From Chrysemys picta bellii (lineage: Eukaryota), in the NCBI RefSeq assembly GCF_011386835.1, contig NC_088807.1, positions 23,436,001 through 23,500,000 on the forward strand: a stretch of DNA of 64,000 nt. Direction: 5' to 3'. The position numbers and the translations under genes are program-made. The notes under the pieces were generated by a model, which did no database searches, was not told the origin of the DNA, and saw only the letters and a program-made list of their open reading frames with translations. Numbering within the stretch: position 1 is the stretch's first letter; each line of letters begins with the position of its first letter. Of the stretch, positions 30,301 through 63,560 are shown piece after piece.

Positions 30301-33300
30301 AGTGGGGTCTAGTGGCTAGAGCGGGGGGAGCTGGAAGCCAGGACTCCTGGGTTCTCTCCCTGTCTCTGAGAGGGGAGTGGGGACTAGTGGTTAGAGCTGG
30401 GGGGGCTGGGAGCCAGAACTCCTGGGTTCTCTCCCTGGCTTTGCCCCTGAACTCGCAGTTTACCCTTCATGCCTCAGTTTCCCCGTGTACCGAGCAAGAT
30501 CGCTGCTCGCCGTATGAGGCCTGGCTGCAGTTTGGGGCCCTCTCTGAGTTCGCAGGCCAGGTGGTGCCAGCCTGGAGCAAAGTGTCACCCGCTTTCTGGC
30601 CCACTGCCAGGTGAAGATAAACTCCCCACTCCCCGGCCTCGCCTCTCTTATCTCTCCCTCACCAGCACAGGCGGCCAGAGTCCCTGAGAACCCCGGCTTA
30701 TCAGGGCTGCGACCTGCCCGGAATCTCACGCTGTTGGGGAATGATTTCCTCATCATCGGGGAGCCAGGGGGAGGGCGGGGGCGGGGAGCGCGTCCCATAG
30801 AGCTGAGATCTGATCAAACTGGGGGAGAATAATTTCTGCCTAAATTTTCCAGGGAAAATGACAATTTTGTTGGTTGGGGCGAAAGCTGGAGAAGTTGGGA
30901 TGGTTTTGGCCGCCTCCCAGAAAGGGACCTGTTGGCTGCTTCCGGGGCGCAGCATGGTGCCAGGACAGATAGGGACTAGCCTGCCTTAGCCCTGCGGCAC
31001 CGCTGACCGGGATCCGCCAGGGTCCCTTCTCGACCAGACAGCCGTGGTGCATCATGGGAGTTGTAGTTCTCTAGGGCGGGCGGGCTCCCTTCCTGGACTA
31101 TGTCTCCCCCAGCAGGGAGCCACGCTCCCGAAGACCCCCACCTGCTCTGACCTACGGGGAGTTCCCTTCCTAGCCCTGCTTTGCAGCGGCCCCCCAATGC
31201 ACAGGGCCGTGCCCAGTGCTGCTGAGTGACGGCCCCTGAAATTCGGGGGGGCCTCGGACGGGGGCGTTGGGGATTCGACCTCCGGGCTGGTGGGGAAAAG
31301 CGGGGCCAGGAGCAGGGCTGGCTTTAGCAAGAGCTGGGCCTGATTCCTGGGGGCGGGGCTTGCTGCAAGCCCCGCCCCCAGGAATCAAGCCACGCTTCGG
31401 CCGGGGTTGCCGGGCTTGGGTCCGACCCGGAGCCACGCTGCGGGGGCCGGGCCGGAGCCGCGCCGCGGGGGCCGGGCCGGGGCTGGGCCGGACCCGAGCC
31501 GCGCCGCGGGGGCCGGGCCGGGGCTGGGCCGGACCCGAGCCGCGCCGCGGGGGCCGGGCCGGGGCTGGGCCGGACCCGAGCCGCGCCGCGGGGGCCGGGC
31601 CGGGGCTGGGCCGGACCCGAGCCGCGCCGCGGGGGCCGGGCCGGGGCTGGGCCGGACCCGAGCCGCGCCGCGGGGGCCGGGCCGGGGCTGGGCCGGAGCC
31701 GCGCCGCAGGGACCAGGCCGGAGCCGCGCCGCGGGGACCGGGCCGGAGCCGCGCCGGGCCAGAGCCGCTGGGGCCTGCGTGCTCGGCGGGAACGGGCGGC
31801 GCCTCCCCGGAGCCCTTCTCGCGCCCCCACCACCCCAGCTTACCTGGTGCTGCCGGGCCGCCCCTCTTCTTTTCAGACTTCCCGCGAATCAGGGGAGGGG
31901 GTGGAGCGTTCAGGGGAGGGGAGGACGGGGAAGTGAGCTGGGGGCGGGGTGCAGAGCTGCAGCGCGGGGCCCTCTTGGCGCGGGGCCCAATTCAGCCGAA
32001 TCGGCTGAATCGGCCTAAAGCCGGCCCTGGCCAGGAGGGTGGGGGCCAGGTGTGGCAGCCAGGTGGAGAGAGGAGCCCAGAGGCACTTACATTTTATTGC
32101 TTTATTGCCTGGGGGTTGATTGGCGTAATCTGATCGGGGCTGGGGGGCAGCTCCCGGGCCAGGCCTCGTCCACCAATCAGATTCAGAGGGGCACTGGGCT
32201 GGGGGGGGGGGGGGGGGCTGTTTCCTTGTGGGAGGAGCAAAACACTGTTAGAATGGGAATCAATTCTGCAGTCTACTGGGTTAGCGTGGGGGTGGGGCTG
32301 GGAGCCAGGACTCCTGGGTTCTATCCCGGCTCTGGGTTGGGGAGTGGGGTCTAGTGGTTAGAGCGCAGGGCTGGGAGCCAGAACTCCTGGGTTCTATCCC
32401 GACTCCGTCTCTCTCCCGGCAGGTGGGGGAAGCGGGCGGCCCACGCCCGGGCGCAAGTGCTGTACTACGTGGCGGAGAACCTGGAGCTGCGGCGGGAGGA
32501 GGTGGCGTCCAGGCTGGGGGCGCTGACCGGGGCCCCCCCCAAGGAGGCACAGCGGGAGGTGGATCTGGCCCTAGAGCGCCTCTTCCACTGGGCGGCCTTC
32601 TGCGATAAATCCGGGGGCGCCGTGCAGGTGGGCCCCAGAGCACCCCCTTCGGCCACGGGGCAGGCGGGGAACACAAGGGGGCGGGGGTGGGGCGGGTTTG
32701 GAACTGGGGGTAGGGCGCAGTGGGGGGGCGGGGCTTGGGGAGGTGAGGGCTAGAGGGACGGGAACAGGGGGAGGGGCTGGGAGGGTGTAAGGTTGGGAGT
32801 GGACCCAGGAGGGGGTGGGACATGTGGGGTAGGAATGGGGGTGGGGGCTCTGCCCACAGGCTGAACAGAGCAGCAGGTGCTTGGGGGCGGGGTTTACTTT
32901 GTCGCTAGGGCTGGAAGTGGGGTAGGGGACCCCCCCCGAATCATTCCCCTGGCTCTGCCCCTCCCCCAGGAAACCCCCCTGCACGGCACCACCCTGCAGC
33001 TCCGCCAGCCCCTGGGCGTCGTGGGGGTCGCCTGCCCGGACGAGCGCCCCCTGCTCAGTTTCCTCAGTCTGCTGGCCCCCGCCGTGGCCCGGGGAAACGC
33101 CGTGGTGATGGTCCCCAGCTCACGCTACCCGCTGCCCGCCCTGGACCTCTGCCAGGTACCTGCCCCGGAGTCCGCTAGCCCCGCCCCCCGTGTGCCTCAG
33201 TTTCCCCATGCCAAAAAGGGAGGACATGGCTGTTGAGAGATGGAAAAGTAGCTACTGGGAACATATGAGCCATTGGACCCTGAGACCCTCTGCCTGGGGA

Positions 33301-47914: not shown

Positions 47915-50194
47915 GACTCCCAGCGATGATGAGGGAAGGAGATCCCAGCCTGGGGGAGGGGGGTGAATAGAAGGGAAAGTGTGTGGGGGGGAACAGGGGA
48001 GGGAGGAAAGGGGGGGGGATGGATAGGCGGGTGGTTAGAGGAGAAGGGGGAGGGGCTCTTCCTGGCCCAGGTACCTCTGTTCCCAAAAGGCCTCCGGCTG
48101 CCAGCACAGCACCGCCCCCATGCTGCCCCCCCCAGCCCAGCCGAGGGGCCGGTGACCCCAGCTCCAGCAGGACGCGTGTTGTTGGGGGGAGCAGAGCCAC
48201 TGCTTGATCCCGGATCGGCCCCTTCAGCCGCAATCCAGCCCAGGGGCAGGCGAGAACAGTCAGAGCAACAGTGTTTCCACCCCCTCCCCCCCGCCAGCTC
48301 TGCTGGTGCCCCTCCGGCCTGATCCGCAGCCTCCCCTGCTGAGAGAGAACCCAGGAGTCCTGGCTCCCTGCCCCCCCTGCTCTAACCACTAGACCCCACT
48401 CCCTTCCCAGAGCCAGGGAGAGAACCCAGGAGTCCTGGCTCCCCGCCCCCCCTGCTCTAACCACTAGACCCCACTCCCTTCCCAGAGCCAGGGAGAGAAC
48501 CCAGGAGTCCTGGTGAGCTGTGGTGGGGAAGTGGGGGTCACTGGGGCAGAAGGGGGCTGTCATGGTCACAGAGCACACTGACTGCCAGGGGAGGGTGCCC
48601 CCTACCGAGCCCCCTGCCCCACTCCCTGCAACCCAGCGCCCCCTGGGGCCGGGTGGAGGGGGGGACGACAACGACGTCCTCTGGTTACCTAGAATCGCTG
48701 AGTTTTAACCCTTGGCCCCTGCCCAGAACCTCAACAGCGTGGGGGGGGCTCAGCCGGTACCCACGGGGTATCAGACTGGGGGAGGGGCACAGAGAGATGT
48801 GGCGTCGGGGGAATGGAAGGGTGGGGGGAGGGGATGGAGGGGGAAGGGAAATGGGGGAGGGGATGCAGGGAGGGTGGAGATGGAGGGGGAGGTGAGGAGG
48901 AAATGGGGGAGGGGACGCAGGGAGGGGGAAATGGAGGCAGAAGAGGAGGGAGGAAGTAGCCCCCAGCGGAGGAGTGCGGCGCAGGGTGGGAGGTTTCCGA
49001 GCCGAGGGGCAGGACAGGAGCGAAGCCGGGTTGGGCCAGGCCGGGCCGGGGAGTCTGGGGTCTGGAGGGATCTGGGGGCCGAGCCGGGGTGACACCCCCT
49101 GCCCTCCCCCCTGGGCCTGCGGCCGAGGTCCCAGCCCTGGGTCTCTGGGCCCAGCTGCACCAGGCCTGTTGCCACCCCCGGACGGACGGTTTGGGGAAGT
49201 CGAGCCAGGCCAGCGTCAGCACCCCACGCCCCGGTCCCACAGCACTCAGAGCAGGGGGGGCTGGGAGCCAGGACTCCTGGGTTCTCACCCCGGCTCTGGC
49301 AATGGAGCATCTCCCCAACTCCCCTTCAAAGCTGCCGGGCTCCAACCCTCCTCCCCCAGCTCTCGGGGCCCCGTCCCCATCCTCCCCCCGCCCCCGTCTC
49401 TGTTCCCCGGGTCAGGTCGCCCGCTGCCGTGCGAGCGAGCTGCTCTGCAGGGGTGACATCCTGCCACAGCTTCCTGAGCCAGCGCCCGGGCCGGAGCTAG
49501 ACGTGAGGAAGCGTCACCACTGGGGTGAGGGGGGGAGGGTGTTACTCACCCCCATTTGCCCGGGGGGACCAGTTCTTGCTGCTTTGCATGGCCCCGCTCA
49601 GTGCACACAGGGGGCGTCCCGCGTCCCCTCGGGCTCCTGGCACCTCTGAGCCCCCCGACATTCAGCCCCTGAGCCGCACAAGCGGGGACGCCCGGCTGAC
49701 GCGTTTCCTGTCTACAGCTGGCTTCCTCCTGCCAGGTCTGGCTGCAGCCATTGGCCGCTCTCGGGCGAGTGCAACTGGCACGTGTCTGCCTGCAAAGGCG
49801 GGACCAAAAGATGCATCAGGACCTCTGGGCTTGCGCAGCTTCACGGCCGGGCTTCGGGTCCCAGGTCCTGCCCCGGGCCCAGAGTTCCAGCCTCGCTAGC
49901 ACTGCTGGCAGGGCTGGCCCCAGGGGGCGCTGGGCTGCGGGGAGCAGGGGGGTCAGCAGGGGGCGCTCTCCCCTGGCCACCAGGGCTGGGCTTTAGGGAC
50001 CTGGGGGGGGGGTGGGTCCTGTCCCTTTGACCCCATGACCTGAGCTGCCTGGTTCTCAGCCCTCCCTGACCACAGGCTTCTCTCTGCCCCTACCTGGTGC
50101 TTTAAAAGGGTCAGAGAAAACAGAAAAACAGGAATGACAAATTGAATTTGTCTACACTTTCTTAGATCCCCAAAAACCAGGCCGTACTGGTTAC

Positions 50195-55085: not shown

Positions 55086-57337
55086 ACTGCAGTAGTAGGA
55101 TTTTATGTTTGTATTTTGTATAACTCAGAATGAAGGATGTCGTGTGTATTCAATATATCCATGTATGGTAGGGTTGGATTGGATTCTGCCGGCCACCCTG
55201 GGTCGTTGGAAAAGACACGTCAGCCAGGCTGCCTGTCTCTGAACTGTTAAGGCAGGAACAGACCAGACCGGTCCTTATGGCGGATTATGGCCCCCTTTGG
55301 TTTTAGGAGAAGTTTTCATGACAATGTTGGCTCTAAGGTCTTGTCTCTCATCTGCATTGCAAACGAAGTTGGGGGTGGTTCTTTTGTAACCCCTGTAGTA
55401 ACCATGTAACCCTTTATAAACGGTAACCCTGTCTGAAATGTTCTGTACACTTGTCTGGGGTGAGGAGCAAAGGACGTGTGCGTGGTTAAGGAGGCATGTG
55501 GAAGCCATCGCAGATGTCCAGATGGTCAAGAAGAAGTGAGGGACTTGGAGAGGCGGCAGGAAAAATCCATTCGCCCGATGCTAAGCGAGTTAGCGGCACT
55601 GACGACCTCAGAGATGAGGCAAACCCCCCCGAAGGCGAGACAAGAAATCAGCCCCTCGCCCCCTGGGGCCAGCCCTGACGGCTGTGCTAACTAGCCTGGA
55701 GCTCTGGACCCGGGGCAGGACCCTGAACCCCGGCTGGGAAGCGGCGCGAGCCCAGAGATAATGAGGCGACTTTTGGTCCCTTCTTTGTGGCCAGACACGT
55801 CCCAGCTGCACTCTCCTAGCTGGAGCCAGTGGGAGGAACCCAGCTGGGAAATGCGTTAGCCGGACGTCCCCGCCTGTGTGGCTCAGCGTCTGAATGTCGG
55901 GGGGCCCGGAGGTGCCAGGAACCTGTTTGGATGCGGGTCACCCCGTGTCTGCACTGAGCGGGGCTGCGAAAAGCATCAAGAAACACCCCCCCGGGCGAAT
56001 GGGGGTGAGTAACGCCTCCCCTACCGGCGGTGACACTTCCTCACGTCGAGCTCCGGCCCGGGCGCTGGCTCAGGAAGCTGTGGCAGGATGTCACCCCTGC
56101 ACAGCAGCTCGCTCGCACGGCAGCAGGCGACCTGACCCGGGGAACAGAGACGGGGGCGGGGGGAGGATGGGGACGGGGCCCCGAGAGCTGGGGGAGGAGG
56201 ATAGGAGCCCGGCAGCTTTGTAGGGGAGTCACCCCATTGCCAGAGCCGGGGTGAGAACCCAGGAGTCCTGGCTCCCAGCCCCCCCTGCTCTGAGTGCTGT
56301 GGGACCGGGGCATGGGGTGCTGACGCTGGCCTGGCTCGACTTCCCCAAACCGTCCGTCCGGGGGTGGCGACAGGCCTGGTGCAGCTGGGCCCAGAGACCC
56401 AGGGCTGGGACCTCGGCCGCAGGCCCCGGGGGGAGGGCAGGGGGCCATCACCCTGGCTCGGCCCCCAGATGCCTCCAGACCCCGGACTCCCCGGCCCGGC
56501 CCAACCCGGCTTCGCTCCTGTCCTGCCTGTCGGCTCGGAAACCTCCCACCCTGCGCCGCACTCCTCCGCTGGGGACTACTTCCTCCCTCCTCTTCTGCCT
56601 CCATTTCCCCCTCCCTGCGTCCCCTCCCCCATTTCCTCCTCACCTCCCCCTCCATCTCCACCCCTCCTCTGTTCCCTCCCCTCCCCCTCAATCTTCACCT
56701 TCCCCCCATCTCCCCCTCCCCCCCTCTCCATTTCCACCCTCCCTCCATCCTCTCCCGCTGCACTCATGGCAGCCCCCTTCTGCCCCAGTGACCCCCCTTC
56801 CCCACCACTGCTCACCAGGACTCCTGGGTTCTCGCCCCGGCTCTGGGAGGGGAGTGGGGTCTAGTGGTTACGGGGGGAAGGGCTGGGAGCCAGGACTCCT
56901 GGGTTCTCTCTCAGCAGGGGGGGCTGCGGATCAGGCCGGAGGGGCACCAGCAGAGCTGGCGGGGGGGAGGGGGTGGAAACACTGTTGCTCTGACTGTTCT
57001 CGCCTGCCCCTGGGTCGGGTTGTGGCTGAAGGGGCCGATCCGGGATCAAGCAGTGGCTCTGCTCCCCCCAACAACACGTGTCCTGCTGGAGCTGGGGTCA
57101 CCGGCCCCTGGGCTGGCGTGGGGGCGGGGCAGCTCAGGGGCGGGGCTCTGCTGGCAACCGGAGGCCTTTTGGGAACAGAGGTACCTGGGCCAGGAAGAGC
57201 CCCTCCCCCTTCTCCTCTAACCACCCGCTTATCCATCCCCCCCCTTCCTCCCTCCCCTGTTCCCCCCCCACACTTTCCCTTCTATTCACCCCCCTCCCCC
57301 AGGCTGGGATCTCCTTCCCTCATCATCGCTGGGAGCC

Positions 57338-61440: not shown

Positions 61441-61772
61441 GGCCAGGGGAGAGCACCCCCTGCTCCCAGCCCCACCTGCTCTAACCACTAGACCACACTC
61501 CCGTCCGAGAGCCGGGGAAAGAACCCAGGAGTCCTGGCTCCCAGCCCCCCAGCTCTAACTGTAGTAGTAGGATTTTATGTTTGTATTTTGTATAACTTAT
61601 AATGAAGGATAAAGGATAATAATGTCGTATGTAGTCAACGTATCCATGTATGGTAGGATTGGATGGGATTCTGCCGGCCACCCTGACTGGACAGCAGGAA
61701 GGAACGACCCTGGGTCTCAAGTTGCAGCAGGGGAGGTCTAGCTTGGATATTAAGAAAATCTTTTTCCCTAGG

Positions 61773-63187
61773 CAGGGCCGGCTCTAGGTTTTTTGCTGCC
61801 CCAAGCAAAAAAAATTTTGGCTGCTTCCCCCTCCCCCAGCACCTCCTGCCGCCCCAGCACTGGGCTCCCCGTCAAACGTGGGATCCGCTACCAGCACACG
61901 GCGGCCAAGCCCTGGCCCAGCCGTGACTCTGTCCCCATGCGGGTGGAGCTGCTGGGCGGCGCGGAGTGGGAGTACTTCCAGGTGGCGGTGCGGCTGCGGG
62001 GCGGAGAAAACGGCCCCTCCCTGGGCTTCGCGGCACTGCTGGTGGCCAAGGTGGATCAGTTCGTACTCACCGCCCTCACCCCTGACATGTTGGCGGCCGA
62101 GGACCTGGAGAGCCCCCTGGACCTGCTCTCTTCAGCCTCACCGCACCCTGGCCCAGCCCCGGCGGGCTGGAAGGCGAGGATCTCCGGCGGCGGGGCTACC
62201 TGCTCAGCACCGACGAGCCCAGCCGGCCGCTCACCTCTTCACACGCTCCGGGAGCCCCTCTCGCCGCAGCTCGGGCTCGGCTCCAGGGGACCCCGCTTCC
62301 CTCCCTCCCCGGCTCCTCACACACTCTGGGCAGAGCAGCCCAGAGGATTCAGGGGGCCTGGGGCAAAGCAATTTCGGGGGCCCCTTCCATAAAAAAAAGT
62401 TGCAATACTAGAGTAACATGTATTTGGAAATGTAAAAAGTAACCAGTGAGATAGATTCAAAAATTAATTTGTAACCATTTGAAAATACACTAAATACATT
62501 ATTTAAAAACATTCAATGCTTTAATGGGATGTCGACATTTGCAATTACATAATGGGCTGTCGCTGGGTGATGGTGATGGTTGGTGCCAATGGGCTGTCGC
62601 TGCCTGGGGGTGGTGCTACTGTTGCCCAGGGCTGGGTGGGGAGCTGGGCTCTGGGTTGAGGGGTGCCCGGATCACAGGGGCTGGGCTCAGGGCTGTGGGG
62701 AGATGGGGTTGGGGGGTGTCCGGCACAGAGGGGCTGGGCTCAGAGCTGGGGGTCAGGGCTGTGGGGAGATGGGGTCGGGGGGTGTCCGGCTCAGAGGGGC
62801 TGGGCTCGGCGCTGGGGGTCAGGGTTGTGGGGGATGGGCTCGGGGGGTGCCAGGCTTAGAGGGGCTGGTCTCGGAGCTGGGGGTCAGGGCAGTGGGGACT
62901 GCCGGAGCGGCGCCCGGGATACAGGGAGGGAGATGGGGTCCTGCTGCCGCTGCCGCGCCGAGTCCCCCCAGGGCAGCGCAGTACAGGGCGCCGCCGGGCT
63001 GGGCAGGGGGCACGGATCCCAGCTCGCGCTGACAGGGCGAGTGGCTGGGCCAGGGCTGGCTCCCGGTAATACCGCCCCAAGCAAAAAAATAAAAAATAAA
63101 AATAAAAAAGGGGGGCCGGAGTGCCGCCTCTTAGAAAGTGCCGCCCCAAGCACGTGCTTGGAGGGCTGGTGCCTAGAGCCGGCCCTG
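61773..63187. mobile_element. Non-autonomous hAT element carrying a captured gene fragment, inserted into a CR1 3' fragment
   Basis: TIRs CAGGGCCGGCTCTAGG / CCTAGAGCCGGCCCTG; perfect 8-bp TSD TCCCTAGG (61765-61772, 63188-63195). Confidence 0.9.
61880..62128 (+). pseudogene. Captured FREM2/FREM3-like coding fragment
   Basis: GIRYQHTAA...[11 protein letters not shown]...[14 protein letters not shown]...[27 protein letters not shown] resembles the N-terminal region of FREM2/FREM3 (recognised from memory, not searched). Confidence 0.75.
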
Positions 63188-63560
63188 TCCCTAGGGGGGG
63201 GGGTGAAGCACTGGAATGGGTTCCCTAGGGAGGTGGTGGAATCTCCTTCCTTAGAGGTTTTTAAGGCCCGGCTTGACAAAGCCCTGGCTGGGATGATTTA
63301 GCTGGGAATTGGTCCTGCTTTGAGCAGGGGGTTGGACTAGATACCTCCTGAGGTCCCTTCCAGCCCTGATCTTCTATGATTCCGGGTCGTTGGAAAAGAC
63401 GCACCAGCCAGGCAGACCAGAACGGTCCTTATGGCGGATTATGGCCCCCTTTGGTTTTAGGGGAAGTTTTCATGACAATGTTGGCTCTAAGGTCTTGTCT
63501 CTTATCTGCATTGCAAACGAAGTTGGGTATAGTTCTTTTGTAACCCCTATAGTAACCATG

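What the first reader, a model, noticed from the sequence alone, without database searches (positions are those of the whole stretch)
61773..63187. Pack-type hAT transposon carrying an in-frame FREM2/FREM3 coding fragment
Seen: between perfect 16-bp TIRs and an 8-bp TSD lies a ~250-bp stop-free stretch (61880-62128) reading GIRYQHTAA...[10 protein letters not shown]...[14 protein letters not shown]...[26 protein letters not shown], in frame with a 199-codon ORF starting near the left TIR. Recognition from memory: this matches the N-terminal region of the Fraser-complex proteins FREM2/FREM3, which are not expected at this locus. Inference: gene-fragment capture by a DNA transposon, well known in plants (Pack-MULE type) but rarely documented in amniotes.
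Basis: partly seen in the sequence, partly recalled or inferred. Interest (0 to 1): 0.72.

Follow-up and report, generated by a model that had tools for sequence, protein, structure and literature searches.

The report
Turtle hAT transposon carrying FREM3 fragment
A small cut-and-paste (hAT) transposon in this turtle genome picked up a 360-base piece of the host gene FREM3 and spread it to dozens or hundreds of places, where it now decays as junk. Such capture is known in animals, but a captured piece copied this often is unusual.

Summary
Window 61773-63187 is a 1,415-bp non-autonomous hAT-type element with perfect 16-bp terminal inverted repeats. Its 8-bp target-site duplication (TCCCTAGG) duplicates a site inside a CR1 repeat.

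Bases 61877-62238 come from a host gene, and that gene is FREM3, not FREM2. They are 82% identical in protein to snapping-turtle FREM3 residues 236-360, and they group with turtle FREM3 in a tree (support 100/99).

The "in-frame coding fragment" is only partly right:
- A 1-base deletion near 62127 breaks the FREM3 frame.
- The 199-codon ORF is a by-product of 68% G+C; 22% of shuffled sequences match it.
- The copies decay at a neutral-looking rate.

The new point is that the element is not single-copy:
- The same cargo sits in short mis-annotated "proteins" of Mauremys and Platysternon, on two scaffolds in the latter.
- In three turtle DNA runs, 20-50 distinct contigs cover each cargo position. 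Their summed depth is roughly 50-450 times single-copy depth.
- The end sequences belong to a far more abundant family.

Pack-type hAT elements are already documented in animals (Tan et al. 2021: 370 cases, 38 in alligator), though none in painted turtle and almost none multicopy. The verdict is a new, unusually amplified member of a known kind, with no sign of function. The scan also noted another hAT capture candidate elsewhere in this genome (s1-318421), which I did not test.

The parts
61765..61772 (.). Left copy of the 8-bp target-site duplication TCCCTAGG, inside a CR1 3' end
   Evidence: The CR1 family reads this site once (loose ends at 63198 and joints 61758-61772 to 63202).
61773..61814 (+). 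Left terminus shared by the whole high-copy hAT family; the perfect 16-bp TIR is 61773-61788 (CAGGGCCGGCTCTAGG)
   Evidence: (I3). In one search, about 300-500 contigs per DNA run stop exactly at 61773 and continue into unrelated flanks (agreement 0.33). Most family members diverge from this copy after 61814.
61815..61876 (+). C-rich subterminal segment of a sub-family; it ends in a pyrimidine tract followed by AG (61856-61857)
   Evidence: depth here lies between that of the termini and that of the cargo; the Mauremys reevesii TRIM10-like model P0022 begins to match at about 61856.
61877..62238 (+). Captured FREM3 fragment, matching FREM3 residues about 239-360 (end of the Frem_N domain plus about 100 residues after it). 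A 1-base deletion at about 62126-62128 shifts the FREM3 reading from frame 61793+3k to frame 61795+3k
   Evidence: (82% identity, E 3e-63 to Macrochelys FREM3). table 4: an extra G behind 62127 is present in part of the family's contigs.
61793..62392 (+).
62239..62321 (+). Segment with the same depth as the cargo and of unknown origin; possibly a decayed continuation of the FREM3 exon
   Evidence: depth matches the cargo bins and contigs break at 62320-62321. No significant protein match.
62322..62433 (+). Fragment of a second, very high-copy repeat (possibly starting at CAGGGGGCC, 62349); the RNA-run (X15) contigs of this repeat diverge from this copy after 62410
   Evidence: depth is close to that of the TIR bins. 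In the RNA run X15, the loose end at 62410 has a consensus ending GGGGGCCCCTG.
62434..62626 (+). A+T-richer internal segment, moderately repeated
   Evidence: depth table.
62627..62898 (+). G+C-rich tandem repeats with a 53/66-bp unit, about 3-4 copies
   Evidence: D1-D5; period 66, 3.3 copies, 89% matches.
62899..63137 (+). G+C-rich internal segment with the lowest copy number in the element; no protein family match
63138..63187 (-). Right terminus shared by the family; the perfect 16-bp TIR is 63172-63187
   Evidence: In one search, 177-252 contigs per DNA run end at 63187 and continue into unrelated flanks.
63188..63195 (.). Right copy of the TSD TCCCTAGG, followed by the rest of the CR1 3' end

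Best explanation
Window 61773-63187 is one copy of a non-autonomous hAT-type DNA transposon family of turtles. In a turtle ancestor its interior acquired about 360 bp of a coding exon of the host gene FREM3, together with scraps of other repeats.

The composite kept the family's terminal inverted repeats. A hAT transposase supplied by another element could therefore cut and paste it. It was amplified to dozens, probably a few hundred, copies. This copy landed in a CR1 repeat and made an 8-bp target duplication.

The cargo is a sub-domain scrap: the last ~21 residues of the Frem_N domain plus about 100 residues after it. It has no promoter or start codon of its own, and it drifts neutrally. It has no protein function. 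Its visible effects are false gene models, and perhaps occasional exonisation into host genes.

Shown: TIRs and TSD, FREM3 origin, presence at several loci and in several turtle families, and a frame break shared by part of the family.

Inferred: mobilisation by a transposase supplied in trans; capture by template switching during repair or replication; the copy number.
For: Ends
- Perfect 16-bp TIRs begin CAGGG, which fits the hAT YARNG motif. The TSD is exactly 8 bp.
- A second element with near-identical TIRs and its own 8-bp TSD (GCCAGGAG) lies at 31313-32029.
- Hundreds of contigs in each of three DNA runs stop exactly at 61773 or 63187 and continue into unrelated flanks (table 7).

Parent gene
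- The cargo, read with X at the break, is 82% identical (102/125, E 3e-63) to Macrochelys FREM3 residues 236-360. It is 47-50% identical to turtle and bird FREM2.
- In the tree, the four transposon copies plus chelydrid FREM3 form a clade with support 100/99 inside sauropsid FREM3.
- The Frem_N domain of that FREM3 spans residues 56-259.

Multicopy
- P0001 (Mauremys mutica), P0002 and P0004 (Platysternon, two scaffolds) and P0022 (M. reevesii) carry the same cargo.
- P0022 shares the non-FREM residues just upstream of the junction, so the capture boundary is common to copies in different species.
- 20-50 distinct contigs cover each cargo position. Summed depth is 6.8-16k in X1 (single copy about 31), 3.3-10.7k in X2 (about 20) and 0.4-3k in X12 (about 7).
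- Contigs from other copies join the left TIR region to the cargo (records 17 and 26).

Neutral decay
- Each copy is 83-86% identical to FREM3 and 77-85% identical to the other copies. The majority state of the copies equals FREM3 in 73 of 79 columns.
- The frameshift near 62127 is shared by part of the family (table 4).
- The ORF is compositional.

The left flank-TIR junction is present with 0 differences over 146 bp in runs of two organism labels (records 1 and 25).
Against: - No autonomous partner with a hAT transposase was found, so superfamily assignment rests on the TSD length and the TIR motif alone.
- The TSDs (TCCCTAGG, GCCAGGAG) do not fit the weak hAT target preference nTnnnnAn well.
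- The copy number comes from summed contig depth, which the tool itself warns is not a copy count. Only the number of distinct contigs (20-50) is a safe lower bound.
It is therefore not shown that the other copies have both TIRs and their own TSDs.
- The FREM3 gene of this genome itself was not seen. The parent comparison uses chelydrid FREM3.
Confidence: 0.85

Rival explanations
1. It is a single-copy, transposition-independent Pack-TIR, the common class in animals according to Tan et al. 2021. In that model a FREM3 piece is copied between two pre-existing hAT relics by gap filling or template switching, and is never mobilised.
For: This is the majority mode in animals; only 4 of the Pack-TIRs in that survey were multicopy. 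The interior is a mosaic of unrelated pieces, as template switching would produce (depth profile).
Against: - Perfect TIRs and a perfect 8-bp TSD that duplicates a single CR1 site show that the whole unit was inserted here.
- The same cargo, with the same upstream junction, occurs in other turtles and on two Platysternon scaffolds.
- Tens of distinct contigs cover each cargo position.
Confidence: 0.05
2. The cargo is a functional coding or exapted sequence: a short FREM3-like protein, or an exon or small-RNA source kept by selection.
For: - The frame is open for 199 codons.
- Gene predictors call proteins on other copies, and one copy is joined to a TRIM10-like model.
- A poly(A) RNA run holds contigs over the cargo (records 17-20).
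Against: - The FREM3 frame is broken near 62127, and the break is shared by part of the family.
- The ORF is expected from 68% G+C.
- Amino-acid divergence between copies (15-23%) is what 8-11% neutral DNA divergence predicts.
- The fragment spans the tail of one domain and about 100 residues beyond it, not a whole domain.
- RNA contigs of a repeat family do not show specific expression.
Confidence: 0.06
3. It is an assembly artefact or a chimera joining a FREM3 read to repeats.
For: The region is rich in repeats and G+C, and short-read contigs break inside it.
Against: - Independent runs of two organism labels hold the exact left flank-TIR junction (records 1 and 25).
- Other runs hold TIR-to-cargo contigs from other copies (records 17 and 26).
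- Independent genome annotations of three other turtle species contain the same cargo.
Confidence: 0.02

Closest known systems
Multicopy Pack-hAT elements of animals, such as Pack-hAT-N8_XT of Xenopus tropicalis carrying 291 bp of the CAPSL 5' UTR (Tan et al. 2021, PMC8277862)
   Same: A non-autonomous hAT element with TIRs and TSDs carries a few hundred bases of a host gene located elsewhere, and more than one transposed copy exists.
   Different: - The frog case has three copies. Here tens of sequence variants, and probably a few hundred copies, are spread over at least three turtle families.
- The cargo here is coding sequence (FREM3) rather than UTR.
- That survey found no Pack-TIR in painted turtle.
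Pack-MULEs of rice and other plants
   Same: Gene-fragment capture by a TIR transposon, amplification of the chimera, frequent mis-annotation as genes, and mostly non-functional cargo.
   Different: - The superfamily differs: Mutator has a 9-10-bp TSD and long TIRs, whereas hAT has an 8-bp TSD and 16-bp TIRs.
- The host is an animal.
- Only one recognisable gene fragment is present here.
Ssk-FB4 of Drosophila melanogaster (Tan et al. 2021)
   Same: A captured host gene moved to several loci, with distinct TSDs at each.
   Different: Ssk-FB4 carries a nearly complete gene and is young and polymorphic with four copies. This element carries a sub-domain scrap and is old and decayed.
Helitron gene captures in vespertilionid bats (PMC4224331)
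   Same: Amplification of host gene fragments to high copy number in an amniote genome.
   Different: Helitrons are rolling-circle elements without TIRs or TSDs, and they capture by read-through. Here the carrier is a cut-and-paste hAT element.

Membership tests
hAT superfamily (non-autonomous member) | 8-bp target-site duplication | tested here: met
   TCCCTAGG lies on both sides and duplicates a single CR1 site. The related element at 31313-32029 has the 8-bp TSD GCCAGGAG.
hAT superfamily (non-autonomous member) | Short TIRs (about 10-25 bp) beginning with YARNG | tested here: met
   16-bp perfect TIRs begin CAGGG. The YARNG rule is taken from established knowledge of hAT elements.
hAT superfamily (non-autonomous member) | Target preference nTnnnnAn | tested here: inconclusive
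   TCCCTAGG fits neither the T at position 2 nor the A at position 7. GCCAGGAG fits only the A at position 7. Two sites are too few to judge a weak preference.
hAT superfamily (non-autonomous member) | An autonomous partner encoding a hAT transposase (BED finger, RNase-H-like core, hAT dimerisation domain) with matching ends | not testable with these tools
   None is present in the 64-kb window. The TIR-like pair at 49909/55662 encloses no transposase ORF. No search of the host genome was available.
hAT superfamily (non-autonomous member) | Many insertions that end precisely at the TIRs | tested here: met
   About 300-500 contigs per DNA run end at 61773, and 177-252 end at 63187, all with unrelated flanks (table 7).
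Pack-TIR / transduplicating element | Internal sequence derived from a host gene that lies elsewhere | tested here: met
   82% protein identity to turtle FREM3 residues 236-360, in a clade with support 100/99. No other FREM3 piece lies in the window. The FREM3 locus of this genome itself was not examined.
Pack-TIR / transduplicating element | Cargo enclosed by both TIRs of one element, with a TSD | tested here: met
Pack-TIR / transduplicating element | Multicopy class: the same chimera at several loci, each with a distinct TSD | tested here: inconclusive
   Several loci and species carry the cargo, and the same upstream junction is seen in other copies.
FREM3 (as source of the cargo) | Closer to FREM3 than to FREM2, FREM1 or FRAS1 orthologues | tested here: met
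   Identity is 82% to chelydrid FREM3, 55-59% to snake, bird and alligator FREM3, 47-50% to turtle and bird FREM2, and 33% to FREM1b.

The most novel reading that the evidence does not exclude
The FREM3-carrying hAT sub-family is the most amplified Pack-TIR yet seen in an animal, with on the order of a hundred copies across Testudinoidea. On this reading its copies are also not inert. They would supply FREM3-homologous sense or antisense RNA (piRNA or siRNA) that modulates FREM3, or they would donate a ready-made splice acceptor plus open frame that is exonised into host genes such as the TRIM10-like model of Mauremys reevesii.
Probability: 0.07. Interest if true: 0.75.

Novelty: new member of a known kind. 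Interest (0 to 1): 0.45.

Why it matters
The one broad survey of animals concluded that DNA-transposon gene capture is almost always single-copy and independent of transposition. It found nothing in painted turtle, probably because the repeat library then held few turtle elements (12 hAT copies counted).

A captured coding fragment that was mobilised many times in turtles is a clear counter-example. It suggests that multicopy captures are hidden inside repeat-family sequences, where pipelines mask them.

There is also a practical lesson for annotation. At least four database "proteins" of turtles are just this transposon cargo. They are named hypothetical protein, RASL11A-like and anthrax toxin receptor-like, and the fourth is the tail of a TRIM10-like model.

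Tried and rejected
- **Pfam alone:** gave only a sub-threshold Frem_N hit (E 0.0017), too weak to decide the question. The PDB sequence search found nothing.
- **FREM2 as parent:** rejected. Turtle (Terrapene) and tinamou FREM2 are only 47-50% identical and fall outside the clade.
- **Fetching DNA of the other turtle copies:** TIRs and TSDs of the other copies, and a DNA-level dN/dS, therefore could not be obtained.
- **Other cargo in the rest of the element:** six further ORFs had no Pfam family, and no further FREM3 homology was found beyond 62238.
- **A possible 5.8-kb autonomous element between TIR-like sites at 49909 and 55662:** the flanking 8-mers match at only 6 of 8 positions and there is no transposase ORF. 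I treat this pair as chance.
- **A second cargo copy in the window:** none.
- **Emydid FREM3:** not retrieved. The 90% cluster of P0100 holds only chelydrid sequences.
- **Literature:** no paper links FREM3 to a turtle transposon. The hAT-6_XT horizontal-transfer paper concerns a different family.
- **Depth as copy number:** used only as a rough guide, because read laying warns against it.

Full report
**1. What is in the sequence**

Window 61773-63187 (1,415 bp) is bounded by CAGGGCCGGCTCTAGG and its exact reverse complement (pair I3). These are the only two exact matches in 64 kb. Directly outside them lies TCCCTAGG on both sides, at 61765-61772 and 63188-63195.

The two flanks are consecutive parts of one CR1 3' end. 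In sequencing runs, other CR1 copies join 61758-61772 directly to 63202-63203, with a few of their own bases between. The CR1 family reads ...TTTCACTAGGA immediately upstream of 63198 (tables 5, 5c and 7). The octamer therefore occurs once in the uninterrupted repeat and twice here, which makes it a true target-site duplication. An 8-bp TSD and short TIRs beginning CAGGG (YARNG) are the hallmarks of hAT elements (established knowledge; PMC11008031 restates the 8-bp TSD).

A second element with near-identical TIRs (1 and 3 mismatches), its own 8-bp TSD (GCCAGGAG) and a quite different interior of G+C-rich tandem repeats lies at 31313-32029.

**2. The cargo is FREM3**

The evidence for its origin built up as follows:

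- Pfam gives only a sub-threshold hit to the last 25 positions of Frem_N (E 0.0017, 18.6 bits against a cut-off of 27).
- The word search found a quail FREM fragment (57% identity, E 9e-19). It also found three short turtle "proteins" 80-85% identical to the cargo.
- The exhaustive search of 1.84 billion representatives found 32 hits. All that could be named are FREM-family proteins or further turtle fragments.
- Compared with these, the window copy has lost one base near 62127. Other copies and all FREM proteins read [14 protein letters not shown], and the window continues that reading in frame 61795+3k.
- Read with X at the break, homology runs from about 61877 to 62238.
- A search seeded with shrew FREM3 retrieved FREM3 of the Suwannee alligator snapping turtle (P0100, 3,161 aa). 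Its residues 236-360 are 82% identical to the cargo (102/125, E 3e-63).
- Identity is 55-59% to snake, bird and alligator FREM3 and 47-50% to box-turtle and tinamou FREM2.
- In a maximum-likelihood tree, the four transposon copies and the two chelydrid FREM3 sequences form a clade with support 100/99. That clade sits inside sauropsid FREM3 (82/99), and FREM2 lies outside.

The parent is therefore the turtle lineage's own FREM3. The Frem_N domain of P0100 spans residues 56-259. The cargo is thus the last ~21 residues of that domain plus about 100 residues beyond it, which is not a foldable unit. No other part of FREM3 is in the window, so this is not the FREM3 locus.

**3. Not a coding sequence**

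- The 199-codon ORF starts at TTG, and the first in-frame ATG is at 61937.
- The segment is 68% G+C. Another forward frame is also stop-free over the same 606 bases. In addition, 22% of dinucleotide-preserving shuffles give an open run of at least 199 codons.
- The FREM3 frame is broken near 62127.
- The four transposon copies are each 83-86% identical to FREM3 and 77-85% identical to each other. Their majority state equals FREM3 in 73 of 79 columns. This is a star-like pattern of independent decay from one founder.
- Contigs of other copies differ from the window by about 8-11% in DNA (records 2-7). That predicts roughly 20% amino-acid difference if all changes are tolerated, and 15-23% is observed. 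This agrees with neutral drift, although it is not a formal dN/dS.

**4. It is a multicopy family**

Evidence from annotated proteins:
- The cargo occurs in Mauremys mutica (P0001).
- It occurs on two scaffolds of Platysternon megacephalum (P0002 and P0004).
- It forms the C-terminal tail of a TRIM10-like model of Mauremys reevesii (P0022).
- These species belong to Geoemydidae and Platysternidae. Earlier notes of this scan call the window's genome painted turtle, an emydid.
- P0022 also shares the non-FREM residues just upstream of the junction (SIGVPTPKHG against STGLPVKRG; FREM3 has CGRFLRAG there). This points to a single capture event.

Evidence from laying Logan contigs of three DNA runs (three organism labels) and one poly(A) RNA run on 61650-63320 at 80% likeness:
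- About 300-500 contigs per DNA run end exactly at 61773, and 177-252 end exactly at 63187. All continue into unrelated sequence, so the termini belong to a very abundant family.
- Most members share only 61773-61814 and 63138-63187 with this copy (loose ends at 61814 and 63138; joints from 61806-61814 to 63138-63165).
- Each cargo position is covered by some 20-50 distinct contigs.

| Run | Summed contig depth over 61874-62321 | Depth of single-copy contigs |
|---|---|---|
| X1 | 6.8-16k | about 31 |
| X2 | 3.3-10.7k | about 20 |
| X12 | 0.4-3k | about 7 |

- Taken at face value, these depths mean about 50-450 copies. The tool warns that summed depth is not a copy number, so I regard "dozens at least, probably a few hundred" as the fair reading.
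- Contigs from other copies run from the left TIR region into the cargo (records 17 and 26).
- An extra G behind 62127 is present in only part of the family's contigs. The window's frameshift therefore marks a sub-family that went on multiplying after the frame was lost.
- The exact left flank-TIR junction of this locus is present with 0 differences in runs of two organism labels (records 1 and 25).

**5. Anatomy of the rest**

The interior is a mosaic:
- a C-rich subterminal piece (61815-61876);
- the FREM3 piece (61877-62238);
- 83 bp of unknown origin that has the same depth as the cargo (62239-62321);
- a fragment of a second very high-copy repeat (62322-62433);
- an A+T-richer stretch (62434-62626);
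- 53/66-bp G+C-rich tandem repeats (62627-62898);
- a low-copy G+C-rich stretch (62899-63137).

None of the other ORFs matches a protein family.

**6. Mechanism**

Shown: the unit transposed as a whole (TIRs plus TSD), the cargo comes from FREM3, and the chimera exists at many loci. Inferred: a hAT transposase from an autonomous relative recognised the retained termini and moved the chimera repeatedly.

The capture itself most likely happened by template switching to the FREM3 exon, either during repair of an excision gap or at a stalled replication fork. These are the gap-filling and FoSTeST models of Tan et al. 2021. The patchwork interior fits such switching. The breakpoints cannot be examined without the parental DNA.

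**7. Comparison with what is known**

Tan et al. 2021 (PMC8277862) catalogued 370 Pack-TIRs in 100 animal genomes:
- 208 of them are hAT.
- 38 are in American alligator and 97 in primates.
- Only four are multicopy, and the worked example has three copies.
- Their table lists painted turtle (chrPic1) with 0 Pack-TIRs and only 12 hAT "consensus" copies.

However, this FREM3 case, the species and the degree of amplification are not in that survey. No paper linking FREM3 to a turtle transposon was found. I could not consult Repbase or Dfam, so the family may already have a name.

**8. Limits**

No DNA of other copies could be read, so their TIRs and TSDs and a DNA-based dN/dS are untested.
- No host-genome search tool was available.
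- The RNA run holds divergent cargo contigs (records 17-20). For a repeat family this does not show specific transcription.

**Verdict**

It is a new member of a known kind and of moderate interest.

Noticed in passing
window 31313-32029: A second non-autonomous element of the same TIR family (CAGGGCTGGCTTTAGC / CAGGGCCGGCTTTAGG) with the 8-bp TSD GCCAGGAG. Its interior is a quite different, about 60-bp G+C-rich tandem repeat. Members of this family share little beyond their ends.
   Followed up: partly
window 62322-62433: A fragment of another very high-copy repeat, with depth close to that of the TIRs. It possibly starts at CAGGGGGCCTGGGG (62349). In the RNA run X15, contigs of this repeat leave the window copy after 62410 with a consensus that ends GGGGGCCCCTG, so it is probably a palindromic MITE with CAGGGG-type ends.
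   Followed up: partly
window 61826-61857 and protein P0022 (Mauremys reevesii XP_039373715.1): The C-rich tract followed by AG, just upstream of the cargo, looks like a splice acceptor. A TRIM10-like gene model of M. reevesii switches from its PRY-domain sequence into a cargo copy at exactly the equivalent point. This may be exonisation of the transposon, or a prediction artefact.
   Followed up: partly
proteins P0001, P0002, P0004 (KAH1176320.1, TFK15583.1, TFK04373.1): Database proteins of Mauremys mutica and Platysternon megacephalum are named hypothetical protein, ras-like protein family member 11A-like and anthrax toxin receptor-like. All start at the cargo's internal ATG and are transposon-borne FREM3 fragments, so they are annotation errors.
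   Followed up: yes
window 49909-49924 and 55662-55677: An inverted pair of the identical TIR-like 16-mer CAGGGCTGGCCCCAGG lies 5.8 kb apart. The flanking 8-mers match at 6 of 8 positions, and the three largest enclosed ORFs have no Pfam family. It is probably chance in G+C-rich DNA.
   Followed up: partly
window 61706-61772 and 63196-63370: The insertion target is the 3' end of a CR1 retrotransposon of an extremely abundant turtle family. Its depth is the highest of all bins laid, and it is also abundant in the RNA run.
   Followed up: no
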